Below, one piece after another: positions 13,768-53,059 of a stretch of DNA of 64,000 nt. The position numbers and the translations under genes are program-made. Position 1 is the first letter of the stretch, and every line of letters starts with the position of its first letter. The DNA is taken from IMG/VR virus record IMGVR_UViG_3300036770_007539, positions 1 through 64,000 of that record; one strand, 5' to 3'. The notes under the pieces were generated by a model that saw only the letters and a list, made by a program, of their open reading frames with translations, made no database searches and was not told the origin of the DNA.

Positions 13768-14649
13768 ATGAACCACGAAGAAAACGCATACTTAGACTTA
13801 TTGAAAAATATCCTAGATAATGGGACAACCAAACAAGACCGCACTGGAGTTGGTACGATTGGAATTTTTGGCTCCCAGTTAAAATTCTCATTGGAAAATA
13901 ATACTCTTCCCTTACTTACCACTAAGAAAATGTTTCTACGTGGAATTGTGGAAGAGCTATTGTTTTTTATTCGTGGCGAAACGGACACTAAAAAACTAGA
14001 AGCGAAAGGCGTTAATATCTGGAAAGGTAATACCAGTCGAGACTTTCTTGACAAGCGGGGTCTTGGATATTTGCCCGAAGGTGATATGGGTAAAGGATAT
14101 GGCTTTCAATGGCGCAATTTTGGCGGAACAGCCAAGTCTTATGATTATAAGAATCATCCCAGAGATGGTGTAGATCAGTTGTCTAGAGCATTGGAAATGA
14201 TTAGAAACGAACCGAATAGTAGGAGAATTATAGTATCGGCTTGGAATCCAGTACAGTTAGATGAAATGGCTTTGCCTCCCTGTCATTGGAACTTTCAAAT
14301 GCAGGTAGAAAATGGAAAATTGAATTTAATGTGGGTACAAAGAAGCTGGGATATTTTTCTTGCTGGCGGATTCAATATTTGCAGCTATGCAATTTTGACT
14401 ATGCTTTTAGCTAAAGCTGCTAATTTGCAACCAGGAAATCTTATTTGTTCAGTAGGCGATACTCACGTTTACCTCAACCATATTGATCAGGTAAAAGAGC
14501 AAATCACAAGAACTCCCTATCCATTTCCACAGCTATCAATAGATAAGCCAATCAATTCAATTGAAGACATGGAAAATCTTTCGTATGAAGATTTTGAACT
14601 TCACAATTATCAATGTCACCCAGCAATTAAAGCAGAAATGGCGGTTTAA
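13768..14649 (+). CDS. thyA: Thymidylate synthase
   Basis: DRTGVGT, PLLTTKK, EELLFF, YGFQWR, SRRIIVSAWNP, LPPCH, QRS.D, FN, GDTHVY motifs. Confidence 0.95.
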   Translation: MNHEENAYLDLLKNILDNGTTKQDRTGVGTIGIFGSQLKFSLENNTLPLLTTKKMFLRGIVEELLFFIRGETDTKKLEAKGVNIWKGNTSRDFLDKRGLGYLPEGDMGKGYGFQWRNFGGTAKSYDYKNHPRDGVDQLSRALEMIRNEPNSRRIIVSAWNPVQLDEMALPPCHWNFQMQVENGKLNLMWVQRSWDIFLAGGFNICSYAILTMLLAKAANLQPGNLICSVGDTHVYLNHIDQVKEQITRTPYPFPQLSIDKPINSIEDMENLSYEDFELHNYQCHPAIKAEMAV

Positions 14650-30387: not shown

Positions 30388-30412
30388 TTGATATAGTTAA
30401 TGTGATATTCGT

Positions 30413-30485
30413 TGGGGAGTCGCCTAGTGGTTATGGCAGCGGACTTTGAATCCGCCATTCGTGAGTTCGAATCTCACCTCCCCTG
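30413..30485 (+). tRNA. tRNA-Gln (anticodon TTG)
   Basis: Cloverleaf: anticodon arm GCGGA-CTTTGAA-TCCGC, T arm GTGAG-TTCGAAT-CTCAC; U1:U72 mismatch; CCA not encoded. Confidence 0.9.
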
Positions 30486-30507
30486 CTAACTTTCTGCAAT
30501 TAAAGCG

Positions 30508-30535
30508 TTGACACCTATAAGATCGTAGCTATGTT
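30508..30535 (+). promoter_or_regulatory. Sigma70 promoter for the sigma-factor gene
   Basis: TTGACA-N16-TATGTT; GCTATGTTGCTTCA is also found in the 20526 promoter. Confidence 0.7.
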
Positions 30536-30580
30536 GCTTCACATGCGGCGGGTAGTCCTGCCCAACAGAGAGGTAATATA

Positions 30581-31378
30581 ATGTCTACGTATCTTGATAA
30601 GATCAAAAACTGCGAGATTCTTTCCAATGATAAGCTTGTTGCTCTGTTTGCCCAATATTCTTTGACGGGTGACATTCAAGCTCGAAATAAAATCATCAAC
30701 TCTACGCTTAGGCTCGTTGTAAAAATTGCAAGCCAGTATAAGCATTATGGAAAGTTTGACGATCTCATCCAAGAAGGTAACTGTGGTCTTTTGAAGGCTA
30801 TTGACAAGTTTGATTTTACCCTTGGAGTTCCCTGGAGTAACTATTCTGCTCAGTGGATTCGAGCTTATATTCTTCGCTTCACATTTAACAATCAAACCAT
30901 GGTAAAGCGAGGAACCTCTCCCGAGGAGAGAAAGTATTACTGGAAACTTCTTCGACTGCGGTCGAAGCTGGAAGCCCAGGGCAAAGACGCCAATGCCGAG
31001 GCTTTGGCTACCGAAATGAACCTAACCAAAGAACAGGTTGAGTTCATTCTTAGCAGGTCTACGGTCGATTCTAGTCTTCAATCAATCTCCTGCAACAGTT
31101 TCGATGAAGATCCTTCTGAGGAAATTCTAGACCCCATCTCTTCAAACGCAGAAGATAATATTGTCGATGCTATGTCTAATTCTCTAATCGAAGAAAAAAT
31201 GAATCTATTTGCTGATAGCCTTACCCCTCAGAAGAGGCTAGTATTTATGAATCGCTTTATGTCTGATGAATACCAAACTTTTGCTCAGCTAGGCGAGCAA
31301 CTAGGAGTCACACGTCAGCGTGTCCAGCAAATTGAATCAGAGCTTAAGAAGCAATTTATTTCTAAAATCAAAATTTGA
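30581..31378 (+). CDS. RpoH/sigma32-like sigma factor
   Basis: LRLVVKIA, DDLIQEGNCGLLKAIDKFD, WIRAYILRF, degenerate RpoH box (GTSPEERKYYWKL), region 4.2 LGEQLGVTRQRVQQIE. Confidence 0.9.
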   Translation: MSTYLDKIKNCEILSNDKLVALFAQYSLTGDIQARNKIINSTLRLVVKIASQYKHYGKFDDLIQEGNCGLLKAIDKFDFTLGVPWSNYSAQWIRAYILRFTFNNQTMVKRGTSPEERKYYWKLLRLRSKLEAQGKDANAEALATEMNLTKEQVEFILSRSTVDSSLQSISCNSFDEDPSEEILDPISSNAEDNIVDAMSNSLIEEKMNLFADSLTPQKRLVFMNRFMSDEYQTFAQLGEQLGVTRQRVQQIESELKKQFISKIKI

Positions 31379-31567: not shown

Positions 31568-31650
31568 TTACGCGCGTAACGGGTGCGCGGGGGCGGGCGC
31601 GCGATATATATTTATAAATAATATATAATATATTATCCTATTTGGATAAC
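31568..31650. other. GC-rich repeat block next to a pure-AT tract in a long intergenic region; candidate origin or other cis site
   Basis: TTACGCGCGTAA palindrome, three YGCGCG at 31571/31584/31598, ~33-bp A/T-only tract. Confidence 0.4.
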
Positions 31651-32371: not shown

Positions 32372-32459
32372 AGAAGGGTGCCAGAGTGGTCGATCGGGCT
32401 TGATTGGAAATCAAGTGTACGTGAATAGCGTACCGGGGGTTCGAATCCCCCCTCTTCTG
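32372..32459 (+). tRNA. tRNA-Ser (anticodon GGA)
   Basis: CTTGA-TTGGAAA-TCAAG anticodon arm, long variable arm GTACG..CGTAC, GGGGG-TTCGAAT-CCCCC, G73; CCA not encoded. Confidence 0.92.
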
Positions 32460-33287
32460 CTAATTTTTAAGTAAATTATTAATTGTTACTGCATCAACAA
32501 AGAATGACATATTTGGAACTGCCGGTCTAAAAAAAGAACATATTCCAATTAATTTCCCATCTATGTCAAAAGCTCCGCCTCCAGAGTTGCCCATATAAAT
32601 CGGAGCTGTAATATGAACTAATTTTTGTTGATATCCTGTGGGATTTATTTCAGTTCTAAAACCTGAAATAATTCCAGTAAAATATGTAAATTCAACTCTT
32701 GCAGGATGCCCAACAATATGAACTTTTTCACCAATTTTTCCATTAGATCCAGATACTTCAACAAAACTATCTGAGCTGTAATCTAATGTTTTTAAAATCA
32801 TAATATCGTTATTATTGTCAAATTTTATTATTTTTGCTTTTTTAGTTGGTGGATTTTCTAAATTATAAGAATTTGATATTTCACCAAAAGTTTTAAATGA
32901 AACTTCTAACCCAAGCATATCATCAAGGTTAGGAGTGTAACTTAATGCTTTAATTATTTTAATTAAATCTTCTAATGTTTTTTCTTCTTTTTTAATAATT
33001 TCTTCGCTAATTTTAGCATCTTCTGGTTCTGGAATTAAGCTTTCTCCACAGTGCCTTGCGCTAATAATTATTTCTGGAGAAATAAAAACTCCTCCACAAA
33101 AAGTAGAATATTTTTTATTTTCTTCTGACGGGCGTAAAAACGCAACAGAGCTATTCTCTAATTTATAAACTAGATTTGTATTTTGCTGTTGCTCTATAGA
33201 TGCAACTTTTACATGCGACGGAATTGAACAACAACCAAGTAAGAAAAACAAACAAAAAAGAAAAGATATCTTGTTTTTCAAAGCCAC
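32460..33287 (-). CDS. Trypsin-like (S1) serine protease, probable lipoprotein
   Basis: Lipobox LLGC; CGGVFI, SARHC, NDIMIL, GNSGG; start may be TTG at 33281 after AGGAG. Confidence 0.85.
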   Translation of the reverse strand: MALKNKISFLFCLFFLLGCCSIPSHVKVASIEQQQNTNLVYKLENSSVAFLRPSEENKKYSTFCGGVFISPEIIISARHCGESLIPEPEDAKISEEIIKKEEKTLEDLIKIIKALSYTPNLDDMLGLEVSFKTFGEISNSYNLENPPTKKAKIIKFDNNNDIMILKTLDYSSDSFVEVSGSNGKIGEKVHIVGHPARVEFTYFTGIISGFRTEINPTGYQQKLVHITAPIYMGNSGGGAFDIDGKLIGICSFFRPAVPNMSFFVDAVTINNLLKN

Positions 33288-34882: not shown

Positions 34883-34928
34883 ATGGGGGATGCCTCTAGG
34901 TGGGGCTAGTTGTTTAGAGAGGAAAAAA

Positions 34929-37106
34929 ATGTCAAAGCTAATTGTTCAAAAAGTTCAGACTCAGACGGACGGATCAATTAAGGATCACCAATATGGGATT
35001 GGTGATGTGGGTCTTGTTTTGGAAATTCTTCGAAATAAGCTTTATAAAGATCCTATTCTCGCTGTAGTTCGTGAGTATATCACCAATGCTCGTGATGCTC
35101 ATGTGGAAGTAGGAAAAGCAGATGTTCCAATTGTGGTTCATTTGCCTTCTTATGAATCCATGTATTTCAAAGTCCAAGATTTCGGTCCTGGTCTTTCACC
35201 TGAGCGAATTGAAAAGATTTTTTGCAATTATGCATCTTCTACTAAGCGCAATTCTGAAGACCAAGTAGGTTATTTCGGAATTGGCAGCAAGAGTGCATTT
35301 GCTTATTCTGACTCTTTTACCATTACATCAGTGGTAGATGGTAAGATTCGAACTTATTCATCTTATATTGATGAGTCTCGGCGTGGCAAGATTTCTTGTC
35401 TTTATGAAGCTGATACCGATCAGCCCAATGGAACAACTATTATTATTCCTGTAAAAAAATACGACCAAGATCGTTTTCTAGACAAGCTTCGATTTATTAC
35501 GGAATTTTGGAGTGTTCGTCCCAGCGTTTTTAAGGATGATTCGGAGTTTAAGATTTCATATGTAAATGAAAAGACGGTTTTTTCTGGCGATAATTGGAAA
35601 CTTGCTCGCAATCCCGATTATGATTTTCGAGGAACCTATGCAATCATGGGCGGAATTCCCTATGCTATTGATATGAATACTCATTTCGAGTCGCATCCTG
35701 CCCGTAATTTCTTCAATTATTCTTGCGTCCGAATTAATTTTAATAATTCTGATCTTAGCCTTGCCGCTTCTAGAGATTCACTTCACTATGATGCTAGAAC
35801 GATCAGGAACATTAATGATAAGCTTGATTCAATCATCAGCGAAATTAACATCAGGATTTCGGAGCAAATCTCACAGGAACCATCTTATAAAGATGCCCTC
35901 ATCAAATACAATGAAGCCTTGGACGCATTTCCTGAACTAAATAGAATCATTGGAAATGTAATCTACGATTCAAAACCAGTTCATAGGAATCCCAAGATTT
36001 CTATGTTTGGGAACAATTCTAGACTTACTTGGTATTCAAAAGTTGTAATGTCCAATGGCTTCAAAGACATTAAAGTCAAAACTGTTAATTATAAAAATCC
36101 AGGCGCAGACGCAGATTTTGCTAATATCTTGTCTAGAAAAGATACGGTAATCATTTTTAATGACCTAGCCGTTACTGACCTGAAAAAGTATGCAACAACA
36201 TTGTTCAATGATTCTAACGCATTGAACAATGTTGTTGTCCTGAGCATCGCAGAAACCAAAGATGATGTATCTAAGCACAAACATCTTTGGTTTGCAGAAG
36301 ATATTTGCTATGCAAAAATCTCAGAAATTACTCCAGGCAAGACGGTTCGACAAAGCAATCGCAGGTCTCTAACTCATAAACAAAATCTATTTCTTTATAG
36401 CTTTGATCCCTCATCTTCCAGGGTAGATTGTGGTCGTCATCTTGTGGAAGTTTCTCCAAATGAAACAATTGCATATTTTCTTTATGACCTAAAGACAAAT
36501 GCGCCTGTTAATCTAAGCAAAAATATTCTATCTTGTATTAAAAGTCTTGAATCCGCTTTGGGAATGAGGGTTTTTGCAGTGGCGACATCAAAGTCTGAAA
36601 AGATTCCATCAAATTGGAAATATATTGATGATGTTGTGACTGAGAAATTCAATTCCATCATGGAGCAATACGGTCTTTCTTCCCTTCAAGATTACTTGAA
36701 TTGCATGGCTATTAGGGAAAAAGTAGAACATTACAATGTTAATATCTTTAAGTCTCTTTTTAAAGACCAAATGAATAATAATAATTTTATTTCCTCATAC
36801 CTGAATAAGGTTCAATTTGCCCAAGACAAGTTCTCTTATGTCTGGGATAATTGCAATCTTAAAACTTTGGCAAAGCATATTAATAAATACCATTACCTTG
36901 AAACGGCTTCTATTCCAGCCTCAGAGGATTATGACTTTAATATTTTTTTCAATTCAGCAATTCAACAATATCCTATGCTTAAATTCTGTCCAGTAAGTTC
37001 ATATACTTCTGAAAAAGACATTAAAAGCGTCAATGATTACATTGAAATGGTCGATCGTCTTAACAAAGACGCGCATGTGTGTATTCATATGCCTTTGTGC
37101 GCTTGA
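34929..37106 (+). CDS. rIIA: rIIA-like protein (GHKL ATPase N-terminus; probable start 34929)
   Basis: LYKDPILAVVREYITNARDAH, VQDFGPGL, ASSTKR, GYFGIGSKSAFAY, GTTIII, SRDSL.Y; followed by rIIB. Confidence 0.9.
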   Translation: MSKLIVQKVQTQTDGSIKDHQYGIGDVGLVLEILRNKLYKDPILAVVREYITNARDAHVEVGKADVPIVVHLPSYESMYFKVQDFGPGLSPERIEKIFCNYASSTKRNSEDQVGYFGIGSKSAFAYSDSFTITSVVDGKIRTYSSYIDESRRGKISCLYEADTDQPNGTTIIIPVKKYDQDRFLDKLRFITEFWSVRPSVFKDDSEFKISYVNEKTVFSGDNWKLARNPDYDFRGTYAIMGGIPYAIDMNTHFESHPARNFFNYSCVRINFNNSDLSLAASRDSLHYDARTIRNINDKLDSIISEINIRISEQISQEPSYKDALIKYNEALDAFPELNRIIGNVIYDSKPVHRNPKISMFGNNSRLTWYSKVVMSNGFKDIKVKTVNYKNPGADADFANILSRKDTVIIFNDLAVTDLKKYATTLFNDSNALNNVVVLSIAETKDDVSKHKHLWFAEDICYAKISEITPGKTVRQSNRRSLTHKQNLFLYSFDPSSSRVDCGRHLVEVSPNETIAYFLYDLKTNAPVNLSKNILSCIKSLESALGMRVFAVATSKSEKIPSNWKYIDDVVTEKFNSIMEQYGLSSLQDYLNCMAIREKVEHYNVNIFKSLFKDQMNNNNFISSYLNKVQFAQDKFSYVWDNCNLKTLAKHINKYHYLETASIPASEDYDFNIFFNSAIQQYPMLKFCPVSSYTSEKDIKSVNDYIEMVDRLNKDAHVCIHMPLCA

Positions 37107-37132
37107 CATGTTATTATTCTGAGTTATATATT
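37103..37132 (+). promoter_or_regulatory. Possible sigma70 promoter for rIIB
   Basis: TTGACA with TATATA/TATATT at N16/N18. Confidence 0.5.
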
Positions 37133-37168
37133 CACTGTTGGGTTCCAAAAAAACAAGGAGTTTACTAT

Positions 37169-38053
37169 ATGAAAATGCCATACACAATTACAAACAATTC
37201 TGTTACACTCGTTCGCAACGGTATGCCAGTTACTGTTTTGCGAGAGCATCCTTCTTTTGATTTTATTCTTGAAGCCATTAAAGCAGATGATTGGAATCAG
37301 GTAATTGATGCACTTGATCGCAAAACAACTGTAAAAGTTATTACAGAAGGAGAAATGGAAGAGAGGAATGGAAGCCTTTTTGTAAAGCTTGATAATGATT
37401 CTTGGTGGCAAGTTCCTGTCGACCTTGGCAAACACATTCTTGATTTTTATTATAAGAAGCTTCCGTATCAGCCCTGGGTAGCTTTTGCCAAAAAGCTTCA
37501 ACAAAATCCATCATATCGATCAGTTCAAGAACTTTTTCGATTCTTGAATGCAAATCAATTTACGCTTTCTGATAATGGCAACTTTATTGCCTATAAAAGG
37601 GTAAAAGAAGACTTTAAAGACATCCATTCTGGAACATTTGATAATTCTGTTGGTACTACAGTTTCAATGTCCAGAAACGAGGTTGATGAAGACTCTGATA
37701 GAACTTGCTCTAATGGATTGCATGTAGCTGCGTTTGATTATGCTTGCAACCATTTTGGAAGCAGCAATAACACTACGGATAAGCTTCTTTATGTGGAAGT
37801 AAATCCCAAAGATGTAGTTGCAGTTCCCAAAGATTATAATAACCAGAAAATGAGGGTATGCGAATACACGGTGCTTGGAGTTTGTGATTATGAATTCAAG
37901 GCTCCACTATATTCTCACTCTGATGGTTTTTATGATCCGTCGGAAAGGTATAATGAGGAATATGAAGATTGGGGATCATATCACAGTGAATGCGAAGAAT
38001 GTGATGGATGCGATGAGTGCGATGATTGTGATGATTGTGACTGTCAGTATTGA
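37169..38053 (+). CDS. rIIB: rIIB-like protein (probable start 37169) with Cys/acidic C-terminal tail
   Basis: NPSYRSVQELFRFL, GNFIAYKRV, TCSNGLHV, VNPKDVVAVPKDYNNQKMRVCEY; SD AAGGAG. Confidence 0.9.
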   Translation: MKMPYTITNNSVTLVRNGMPVTVLREHPSFDFILEAIKADDWNQVIDALDRKTTVKVITEGEMEERNGSLFVKLDNDSWWQVPVDLGKHILDFYYKKLPYQPWVAFAKKLQQNPSYRSVQELFRFLNANQFTLSDNGNFIAYKRVKEDFKDIHSGTFDNSVGTTVSMSRNEVDEDSDRTCSNGLHVAAFDYACNHFGSSNNTTDKLLYVEVNPKDVVAVPKDYNNQKMRVCEYTVLGVCDYEFKAPLYSHSDGFYDPSERYNEEYEDWGSYHSECEECDGCDECDDCDDCDCQY

Positions 38054-52696: not shown

Positions 52697-53059
52697 ATGA
52701 TGAGTCTTTCAAAAGAAAAGTTAATTAAATTTAAAGAGTTTTTTATGATTGAGCATGAAAAAATTGTAAAGAATTCGGCAGCAAGATCTTTGGACGAAAC
52801 AGACGTTGGAGGAGATGAAGCCGATATAGTTTCTTTAGGTCAAATTAAAAATTTGGCTGAATCTCTTTCTGCAAGAGATAAGGCTGCGCTTAATCGCATT
52901 GAAAACTCTCTAATAAAGATTGCTAAAGGTACTTTTGGTCAATGTGAAGAATGCGAAGAGCTTATTTCGGAAGCAAGATTAAAAGCAATTCCTGATTGTT
53001 CTTTTTGCATTTCTTGTGCAGAGCAATATGAATTAAATGTAAAAAGGGGAATGGCTTGA
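52697..53059 (+). CDS. dksA: DksA/TraR C4 zinc-finger protein
   Basis: GDEADI coiled-coil tip, IENSL.KI..GTFGQCEEC.E.I...RLKAIP....CISC. Confidence 0.85.
   Translation: MMSLSKEKLIKFKEFFMIEHEKIVKNSAARSLDETDVGGDEADIVSLGQIKNLAESLSARDKAALNRIENSLIKIAKGTFGQCEECEELISEARLKAIPDCSFCISCAEQYELNVKRGMA

What the first reader, a model, noticed from the sequence alone, without database searches (positions are those of the whole stretch)
30508..31378. RpoH-like sigma factor resembling myxobacterial developmental sigmas, with an altered RpoH box
Seen: a complete group-3 sigma with WIRAYILRF..N..MVK.GT; the RpoH box is changed from QRKLFFNL to ERKYYWKL; a strong early promoter sits upstream. Established: M. 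xanthus SigB, SigC and SigE are sigma32-like and act in fruiting-body and spore development, and some Bacillus phages carry sporulation-like sigmas. Inference: it may divert development or sporulation, or serve as a middle-gene sigma. Together with the GltG-like, roadblock and DksA genes it would form a toolkit for manipulating social behaviour.
Basis: partly seen in the sequence, partly recalled or inferred. Interest (0 to 1): 0.6.

Follow-up and report, generated by a model that had tools for sequence, protein, structure and literature searches.

The report
Huge-phage sigma factor of RpoH ancestry
This is a real, complete sigma factor gene carried by a very large phage; it descends from the bacterial heat-shock sigma (RpoH) but has rebuilt DNA-reading motifs, so it most likely retargets the host RNA polymerase to phage genes, and nothing ties it to myxobacterial development.

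Summary
Window 30581-31378 (+) encodes a 265-aa sigma-70-family protein with regions 2, 3 and 4. Its RpoH box reads ERKYYWKL instead of QRKLFFNL. A TTGACA-N16-TATGTT promoter lies at 30508-30535.

The window is the first 64 kb of a 301-kb phage record with about 33% GC and rIIA/rIIB genes; no RNA polymerase was detected. The sigma has 16 close relatives (44-79% identity), and the three neighbourhoods read are syntenic phage contigs. In trees it sits in a phage clade (support 100/97), inside the RpoH-type clade (100/100). Its sister is a small group holding a Polyangia sigma-32 paralog (96/97). It does not fall within either group of Myxococcales paralogs.

Within the phage clade the -35-reading helix changed first (RERVRQ to RQRVQQ), and the RpoH box changed later. 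Canonical sigma-32 promoters are not enriched in the phage genome.

Best reading: an early-expressed phage sigma that redirects host RNA polymerase to phage-specific promoters, which I could not identify. The developmental or "social toolkit" reading is not supported: no roadblock domain was found, the whole phage lineage has 28-44% GC, and the gene is a conserved phage core gene. This is a variant of a known kind, of moderate interest.

The parts
30581..31378 (+). Coding sequence of the 265-aa sigma-70-family factor of RpoH ancestry. Sigma2 is about residues 2-105, sigma3 114-160, a disordered 3.2 linker 164-186, and sigma4 190-264.
   Evidence: phrog_351, 6e-39; AlphaFold2 pLDDT 83.4; Foldseek top matches SigA, sigma32 and sigmaS.
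30926..30949 (+). Codons of the altered RpoH box, ERKYYWKL (residues 116-123), at the start of the first sigma3 helix.
   Evidence: Only 3 of 8 residues match QRKLFFNL. The box is invariant or nearly so within the phage family.
31307..31336 (+). Region 4.2 recognition helix, ...VTRQRVQQIE (residues 243-252). It carries Q at the positions equivalent to sigma70 E585 and R588.
   Evidence: Cellular RpoH-type proteins have (S/T)RERVRQ(I/L)E, whereas most of the phage clade has RQRVQQIE.
30508..30535 (+). Sigma-70-type promoter, TTGACA-16 nt-TATGTT, 45 nt upstream of the ATG. It is the only member in the window of an 8-copy promoter family, TTGACA-N7-GATCG-NN-GC.
   Evidence: (GTTGACA invariant in L002, L005 and L006).
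30567..30573 (+). Shine-Dalgarno-like AGAGAGG, 7 nt before the start codon.
   Evidence: Read.
30413..30486 (+). tRNA-Gln (UUG) directly upstream. The order motif-tRNA-promoter-sigma is conserved in the relatives.
30390..30396 (+). GATATAG, a copy of the phage-specific intergenic motif G(A/T)TATAG, 16 nt before tRNA-Gln. Read-through from it could also reach the sigma gene.
   Evidence: (conserved as GATATAGTT or GTTATAGTT in relatives).

Best explanation
This is a phage-encoded alternative sigma factor. Its gene descends from a cellular RpoH-type (sigma-32) gene that an ancestor of a lineage of very large phages captured long ago. That lineage has kept it as a core early gene.

Proposed mechanism:
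1. After infection, the host's primary-sigma holoenzyme transcribes the gene from the TTGACA-N16-TATGTT promoter. This promoter belongs to the same class as a battery of promoters in a GC-rich island of the phage genome.
2. The protein binds host core RNA polymerase through its conserved sigma2 and sigma4 surfaces.
3. It directs the polymerase to phage promoters that neither the host's primary sigma nor its sigma-32 reads, probably a middle class of genes.

Shown: the protein is a full sigma of RpoH ancestry; it sits in a phage clade; the neighbourhoods read are phage contigs that share genes with the window; the promoter is conserved; and the DNA-reading and RpoH-box residues are changed yet conserved. 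Inferred: binding to host core, the timing class, and the new promoter specificity. The target promoters were not identified.
For: - **Phage context.** The record is a 301-kb virus at about 33% GC. It carries rIIA/rIIB and genes for thymidylate synthase, RNA ligase, a helicase and a topoisomerase. No RNAP beta subunit was detected in the 301 kb.
- **Conserved core gene.** There are 16 relatives at 44-79% identity; the three neighbourhoods read are syntenic contigs. Seven of seven inspected members of the wider clade lie on phage-like contigs. Several of these share SpoU, FtsK-like, RNA-ligase, trypsin or dCMP-deaminase neighbours with the window.
- **Phylogeny.** The RpoH-type clade has 100/100 support and the phage clade 100/97. 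Two quick trees with other sampling gave 96-97.
- **Stepwise change.** Basal phage members keep the canonical QRKLF(F/Y)NL box (P0134, P0108, P0020, P0136). P0133 and P0121 are intermediate (ERKIFW..). This family has ERKYYWKL. Region 4.2 changed earlier, from RERVRQ to RQRVQQ.
- **DNA-reading residues.** The residue equivalent to sigma-32 K130, which reads the extended -10 element (PMC10216364), is P114 here and varies within the family. The melting-wedge position (W433 in sigma70, H107 in sigma32) is Q91.
- **Promoters.** Canonical sigma-32 promoters are not enriched in the phage genome (9 observed, 9.7 expected). The early-type promoter is conserved.
- **Literature.** Jumbo phages without their own RNAP typically encode sigma factors thought to retarget host RNAP (PMC7824862; PMC13282480).
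Against: - No promoter class could be assigned to this sigma. The one clear phage-specific motif, G(A/T)TATAG, has no conserved -35 partner. It may belong to the second, smaller sigma-like protein at C1:211196-211837.
- The record is only about 71% complete, so a phage RNA polymerase could lie in the missing part.
- The host is unknown.
Confidence: 0.62

Rival explanations
1. Chaperone hijack. The protein still works as a sigma-32, freed from host feedback control. It switches on the host heat-shock regulon (GroEL/ES, DnaK, proteases) to help fold the virion proteins of a very large phage.
For: - It has RpoH ancestry.
- Region 2.4, WIRAYILRF, is identical to that of Myxococcota RpoH-type proteins, so -10 reading may be retained.
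- The residue equivalent to E. coli A50 is an invariant Arg. From my own recollection of the literature, A50 lies in the region 2.1 segment needed for chaperone- and FtsH-mediated control. The change is compatible with escape from that control.
Against: - Both -35-reading residues that cellular RpoH proteins share with sigma70 (E585 and R588 equivalents) are Gln.
- The equivalent of the extended -10 reader K130 is not conserved.
- The RpoH box itself is rebuilt.
- The protein scores less than half the equivalog cutoff.
Confidence: 0.15
2. The sigma mimics myxobacterial developmental sigmas (SigB, SigC, SigE) and diverts fruiting-body or spore development, as part of a toolkit for manipulating social behaviour.
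For: - The top cellular hits are Myxococcota sigma-32-like proteins.
- The sister group of the phage clade contains a Polyangia paralog flanked by hybrid histidine kinases.
- SigB, SigC and SigE are sigma-32 homologues needed for differentiation, not heat shock (Ueki and Inouye 2001, cited in PMC4320627).
- Bacillus phages carry sporulation-type sigmas (PMC9429907).
- Forced union with Myxococcales paralog group B is not rejected (p-AU 0.091).
Against: - The gene lies within a phage clade on a long branch, so it is an old core gene and not a recent host copy.
- It is in neither Myxococcales paralog group.
- The phage lineage has 28-44% GC, against 64-74% in the Myxococcota loci.
- The promoter-reading residues differ from all cellular relatives.
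- No roadblock domain is present.
- The rest of the window holds ordinary early and DNA-metabolism phage genes.
Confidence: 0.05
3. Competitor or decoy. The protein mainly occupies host core RNA polymerase to shut off host transcription, and has no specific promoters of its own.
For: - It is expressed early.
- The core-binding regions 2.1-2.2 are conserved.
- No target promoter was found.
Against: The recognition helix of region 4.2 and regions 2.3-2.4 are invariant across the family. That conservation is hard to explain without DNA recognition.
Confidence: 0.06

Closest known systems
Proteobacterial RpoH (sigma-32), for example E. coli or Salmonella RpoH (PDB 8HKC)
   Same: - Group 3 architecture: regions 1.2-2, 3 and 4, with no region 1.1 and no non-conserved insert.
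- It is the best NCBIfam model.
- It lies inside the RpoH-type clade at 100/100 support.
- The equivalent of T128 is kept.
   Different: - Identity is 28%, and the score is below half of the equivalog cutoff.
- The RpoH box is ERKYYWKL, not QRKLFFNL.
- The K130 equivalent is Pro, the wedge residue His is Gln, and region 4.2 is RQRVQQ, not AERVRQ.
- It is encoded by a phage.
Myxococcota sigma-32-like paralogs, including the M. xanthus SigB/SigC/SigE type and the Polyangia paralogs L017 and L020
   Same: - They are the highest-scoring cellular relatives, at 34-39% identity.
- Region 2.4, WIRAYILRF, is identical.
- A Polyangia paralog group is sister to the phage clade at 96/97.
   Different: - The cellular proteins keep the canonical box and region 4.2.
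- They carry N-terminal extensions (330-450 aa).
- They lie in GC-rich cellular contexts.
- The phage protein is in neither Myxococcales paralog group.
Sigma factors of jumbo phages that lack their own RNA polymerase ('group 2' of Iyer et al. 2021, PMC7824862); classical examples are SPO1 gp28 and gp33/34 and T4 gp55
   Same: - The sigma is encoded by a large phage with T4-like rIIA/rIIB and no detected RNAP.
- A second, smaller sigma-like protein lies in the same genome.
- The presumed role is to retarget host RNAP in a temporal cascade.
   Different: - The full-length phage sigmas in that survey are described as RpoD-like. This one, and its clade, derive from RpoH-type sigma.
- The clade shows a stepwise rebuild of the RpoH box and of the -35 helix.
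Sporulation-type sigmas (SigF/SigG-like) of Bacillus phages (PMC9429907)
   Same: Both are phage-borne homologues of a host alternative sigma.
   Different: - The two come from different sigma groups. SigF and SigG models score only 77-83 bits.
- Here there is no close host counterpart, and the promoter-reading residues have diverged, so mimicry of a host regulon is unlikely.

Membership tests
Sigma-70 family | Regions 2 and 4 (and 3) are present, with the sigma fold. | tested here: met
   - Pfam r2 7e-11, r4 3e-10, r3 0.004.
- phmmer hits to solved SigA, RpoH and RpoS structures at 1e-24 to 1e-29.
- AlphaFold2 model with pLDDT 83; Foldseek top hits are sigma factors.
RpoH (sigma-32) family | Scores above the curated equivalog cutoff (TIGR02392, 323 bits). 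| tested here: not met
   The score is 155.6 bits. It is the best model but under half the cutoff.
RpoH (sigma-32) family | RpoH box Q(R/K)(K/R)LFFNLR (PMC3441632). | tested here: not met
   The box is ERKYYWKLL, with 3 of the first 8 residues identical. It is conserved in this altered form.
RpoH (sigma-32) family | Phylogenetic placement within the RpoH-type clade, apart from RpoS and group 1. | tested here: met
   The branch has 100/100 support and 100 in a quick tree. Basal members of the phage clade keep the canonical box.
RpoH (sigma-32) family | Reads sigma-32-type promoters (TTGAAA ... CCCCATnT) and controls heat-shock genes. | not testable with these tools
   Indirect evidence only. 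The -35-reading residues are changed, and such promoters are not enriched in the phage genome.
Myxobacterial developmental sigmas (SigB/SigC/SigE) | Groups with the sigma-32-like paralogs of Myxococcales. | tested here: inconclusive
   The free trees place it outside both paralog groups of 11 Myxococcales genomes. The AU test does not reject union with group B (p 0.091). The named M. xanthus proteins could not be obtained.
Myxobacterial developmental sigmas (SigB/SigC/SigE) | Acts in a myxobacterial host during development. | not testable with these tools
   The host is unknown. GC is 33% against 64-74% for the Myxococcota loci.
Phage-encoded sigma factors of RNAP-less jumbo phages | Encoded in a large phage genome that lacks its own RNA polymerase. 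| tested here: met
   The record is a 301-kb virus. No RNAP beta subunit was found. The search for a T7-type RNAP had no working control. The record is about 71% complete, so absence is provisional.
Phage-encoded sigma factors of RNAP-less jumbo phages | Conserved among related phages as part of the phage gene order. | tested here: met

The most novel reading that the evidence does not exclude
A lineage of huge phages (with genomes probably near 430 kb) carries a private branch of the heat-shock sigma family. That branch was rebuilt in steps: first the -35-reading helix, then the RpoH box, which lies next to the sigma-32 residues that contact the spacer and extended -10 element and is reported to take part in RNA polymerase interaction. 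The result would be an orthogonal transcription channel on the host polymerase, possibly also blind to the host's DnaK and FtsH control of sigma-32. If so, the series of natural intermediates would be a ready-made map of how the specificity of a sigma-32 scaffold can be rewired.
Probability: 0.4. Interest if true: 0.5.

Novelty: new variant of a known kind. Interest (0 to 1): 0.33.

Why it matters
Phage-encoded sigma factors that retarget host RNA polymerase are well known. The survey read here describes the full-length ones in jumbo phages as RpoD-like.

This case shows a phage clade descended from the heat-shock sigma. Natural intermediates document the order in which its -35-reading helix and its signature RpoH box were changed. 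That gives a concrete system for asking what the RpoH box does, and for mining sigma/promoter pairs that do not cross-talk with host ones.

It does not open a route to studying phage manipulation of myxobacterial social behaviour, because that link is not supported.

Tried and rejected
- **Sequencing runs.** There are therefore no expression data, no environment data and no read laying.
- **Promoter search for this sigma.**
  - A gapped-dyad count gave only AT-rich noise.
  - Canonical sigma-32 patterns occur at chance level.
  - GTAAGTT is enriched upstream of genes (7 observed, 0.9 expected) and is conserved before one orthologous gene. Its distance to start codons and to -10-like hexamers is inconsistent, so it was not adopted.
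  - TGATATAG is not over-represented in total (4 observed, 3.3 expected in the window). Only its intergenic placement is significant.
- **Host inference.** Homologues of ThyA and of a GC-island phosphatase, and two cluster look-ups, returned only unnamed metagenomic and phage proteins.
- **Pfam searches in the phage's own genome.** The Gp23 and T7-RNAP searches had controls that rang nowhere, so their negative results are uninformative.
- **GC-rich patch after the gene.** It folds no better than shuffled sequence (z 0.33), so a terminator call is not secure.
- **AU test.** The test of phage clade plus Myxococcales group B was inconclusive (p 0.091).
- **Complex prediction.** Complex prediction was not used, because no host partner is known.

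Full report
**1. What is there**

The ORF at window 30581..31378 (+) starts with ATG and encodes 265 aa. AGAGAGG lies 7 nt upstream of the start codon. Pfam finds Sigma70_r2 (7e-11), Sigma70_r4 (3e-10) and a weak r3 (0.004).

Among NCBIfam models the best is rpoH_proteo at 155.6 bits. RpoS models follow at 133 bits and RpoD at 124. All are far below their curated cutoffs; the rpoH cutoff is 323. PHROGs places the protein in 'RNA polymerase sigma factor' phrog_351 (6e-39).

Solved SigA, RpoH and RpoS structures match at 1e-24 to 1e-29. An AlphaFold2 model (pLDDT 83.4) shows three helical domains: sigma2 (residues 2-105), sigma3 (114-160) and sigma4 (190-264). A disordered 3.2 linker joins the last two. 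The best Foldseek matches are full-length sigma factors, including E. coli sigma-32.

**2. The altered RpoH box is real and conserved**

Cellular relatives read QRKLFFNL or close variants. These include Salmonella RpoH and homologues from Myxococcota, Desulfobacterota, Bdellovibrionota and alphaproteobacteria. The window protein reads ERKYYWKL at residues 116-123.

Across 16 homologues of 44-79% identity, E116, R117, K118 and L123 are invariant, and Y119, Y120 and W121 are at least 90% conserved. The changed box is therefore under selection.

The box opens the first sigma3 helix. In E. coli sigma-32, residues T128 and K130 lie just before the box. They contact the promoter spacer and the 'extended -10' element (PMC10216364). 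Here the T128 equivalent is kept (T112), but the K130 equivalent is P114 and varies within the family. The box has also been linked to RNA polymerase interaction (PMC3441632).

**3. Genomic setting**

- The window is the first 64 kb of a 301,007-bp virus record, rated about 71% complete. GC is about 33%.
- Nearby genes are typical of a large lytic phage. They include an FtsK-like ATPase, an HNH endonuclease, a ParB-like protein and a trypsin-like protease. rIIA and rIIB are present, as is adenylosuccinate synthetase. Further genes encode thymidylate synthase, RNA ligase, a UvrD-type helicase and a topoisomerase.
- No RNA polymerase beta subunit is detected in the 301 kb.
- A second, smaller sigma-like protein (213 aa, C1:211196-211837) and a GerE/sigma4-like protein (157 aa, C1:88406-88879) exist elsewhere in the genome.
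- This matches published descriptions of jumbo phages that lack their own polymerase and encode sigma factors to use the host enzyme (PMC7824862; PMC13282480).

**4. Promoter**

TTGACA-16 nt-TATGTT at 30508-30535 is the best sigma-70-type match in the region, 10 of 12. In three diverged relatives the order is the same: a G(A/T)TATAG motif, tRNA-Gln, the promoter, then the sigma gene. GTTGACA is invariant in them, while the -10 hexamer drifts.

The exact pattern TTGACA-N7-GATCG-NN-GC occurs eight times in the genome. One copy is here; seven lie in a GC-rich island at about 270-289 kb. This is the only copy in the window.

The sigma gene therefore belongs to a coherent promoter class with canonical -35 and -10 elements. 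That class is most simply read by the host's primary sigma early in infection. The timing is an inference.

**5. Relatives and phylogeny**

The large protein search found 16 close relatives of 256-271 aa. Below them identity drops to 34-39%, mostly to Myxococcota proteins named sigma-32. The contigs of the close relatives that were read are syntenic phage fragments.

- **Quick tree, 89 rows.** The family falls in a clade of unnamed short sigmas (SH-aLRT 97), inside the RpoH-type group.
- **Quick tree, 79 rows.** This tree adds the sigma-32-like paralogs of 11 Myxococcales genomes. It again gives a phage clade (96). The Myxococcales paralogs form two separate groups (both 99), and the phage clade is in neither.
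- **Careful tree, 56 rows.** The RpoH-type clade has 100/100 support and the phage clade 100/97. The phage clade plus a small group (P0124 and a Polyangia paralog) has 96/97.
- **Sister group.** The Polyangia paralog lies on a GC-rich contig flanked by hybrid histidine kinases, so it is cellular. P0124 sits next to an AcrVA2-like gene and small ORFs, so its setting is less clear.
- **Contexts.** All seven other clade members that were inspected lie on phage-like contigs. Several share SpoU, FtsK-like, RNA-ligase, trypsin or dCMP-deaminase neighbours with the window. Their GC is 28-44%.
- **AU test.** A forced clade of the phage sequences with Myxococcales group B costs 33 log-likelihood units but is not rejected (p-AU 0.091). 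The groups were defined after the tree was seen.

**6. Order of changes within the phage clade**

The cellular sister proteins keep canonical motifs. The most basal phage member, P0134, has QRKLFYNL and TREWVRQVE. P0108, P0020 and P0136 keep the canonical box but have RQRVQQIE in region 4.2. P0133 and P0121 have ERKIFW.. in the box. This family has ERKYYWKL.

The two region 4.2 changes fall on the equivalents of sigma70 E585 and R588. The numbering and their role in reading the TTG of the -35 element are from my own knowledge. Cellular RpoH-type proteins keep both residues.

The position of the promoter-melting wedge (Trp in sigma70, His in sigma-32) is Gln here.

Taken together, these changes point to a new promoter specificity. 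In line with that, canonical sigma-32 promoter patterns occur in the phage genome at chance frequency.

**7. What it probably reads: unresolved**

The clearest phage-specific motif is G(A/T)TATAG. Twenty of its 61 copies lie in the 6.5% of the genome that is intergenic. They sit 15-60 nt before the start codons of many large genes between 100 and 200 kb, and just before tRNA-Gln and tRNA-Ser.

This motif has no conserved -35 partner. The recognition helix in sigma4 of the 265-aa sigma is invariant, which suggests that the protein does read a -35 element. The -10-only motif may therefore belong to the smaller second sigma.

No third promoter class emerged from k-mer, dyad or footprinting attempts.

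**8.

- The DksA/TraR zinc-finger protein is real (window 52697-53059).
- No Roadblock/LC7 domain is found in the 301 kb.
- GltG was not tested.
- The host could not be named.
- The canonical TTGACA/TAnnnT early promoters argue against a Bacteroidota host. This rests on my own knowledge of Bacteroidota promoters.
- The low GC of the whole phage lineage argues against classical GC-rich myxobacteria. It is compatible with, for example, Bdellovibrionota (36-43% GC in loci L015 and L047).
- SigB, SigC and SigE of M. xanthus are indeed sigma-32 homologues used in differentiation (reference 64 of PMC4320627). Nothing here links the phage protein to their regulons.

**9. Verdict**

The gene is a phage core gene of RpoH ancestry with rebuilt promoter-reading parts. 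Its most likely role is to retarget host RNA polymerase to phage promoters (confidence about 0.6). The developmental-hijack reading is unlikely (about 0.05). This is a variant of a known kind and is of moderate interest.

Noticed in passing
G000:C1:270000-289000 (outside the window; loci L114 and L115): A GC-rich island (52-63% GC, against about 33% elsewhere) carries seven near-identical strong promoters, TTGACAAG-N5-GATCGTTGC-TAGTAT, on the + strand. At least one real gene lies there, a calcineurin-like phosphoesterase whose homologues sit on other huge-phage contigs. The sigma gene's promoter is the only other copy of this promoter pattern in the genome.
   Followed up: partly
Whole genome G000:C1; in the window at 30390, 32355, 47788, 17863, 20981 and 42677(-): The motif G(A/T)TATAG is about five times enriched in intergenic DNA (20 of 61 copies in 6.5% of the genome). 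It sits 15-60 nt before the starts of many large genes at 100-200 kb and just before tRNA-Gln and tRNA-Ser. It looks like a -10-only phage promoter class, and which factor reads it is unknown.
   Followed up: partly
window 31568-31609; second copy at G000:C1:145357 (- strand): A perfect 12-bp palindrome, TTACGCGCGTAA, is followed by a GC-rich stretch and then GATATAT, in the intergenic region right after the sigma gene. A similar element occurs once more in the genome, and a GC-rich block at the same place is conserved in relatives L002 and L005. It could be a regulator site or a terminator. As RNA it folds no better than shuffled sequence.
   Followed up: partly
G000:C1:211196-211837 (L011:1327-1965) and G000:C1:88406-88879 (L008:1297-1767): There is a second, divergent sigma-like protein (213 aa; phrog_351 3e-11, weak Pfam region 2) and a 157-aa GerE/LuxR-type, sigma4-like protein. 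The phage probably runs a cascade with more than one sigma.
   Followed up: partly
window 34890-38053: Adjacent rIIA (738 aa) and rIIB (324 aa) homologues. The rIIA gene has its own TTGACA-type promoter, conserved in relative L002.
   Followed up: partly
G000:C1:129870-132510 and G000:C1:296138-296343: A LAGLIDADG homing endonuclease gene (131698-132501) is bracketed by two roughly 45-bp near-identical repeats that end in TGATATAGTCTGA (at 129907 and 132502). A group I intron (Rfam, 59.9 bits) lies near the end of the record.
   Followed up: no
A Roadblock/LC7 domain was not found anywhere in the 301 kb.
   Followed up: partly
window 13768-14649: Homologues of the thymidylate synthase at 59-66% identity lie on many contigs of 420-470 kb. 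Together with the 71% completeness estimate, this suggests that the phage belongs to a lineage with genomes of about 430 kb.
   Followed up: no
window 32372-33287: tRNA-Ser (GGA, + strand) abuts the 3' end of a minus-strand trypsin-like protease gene that has a lipoprotein-like signal. This protease also accompanies the sigma gene in distant members of the phage clade (L111, L159).
   Followed up: no
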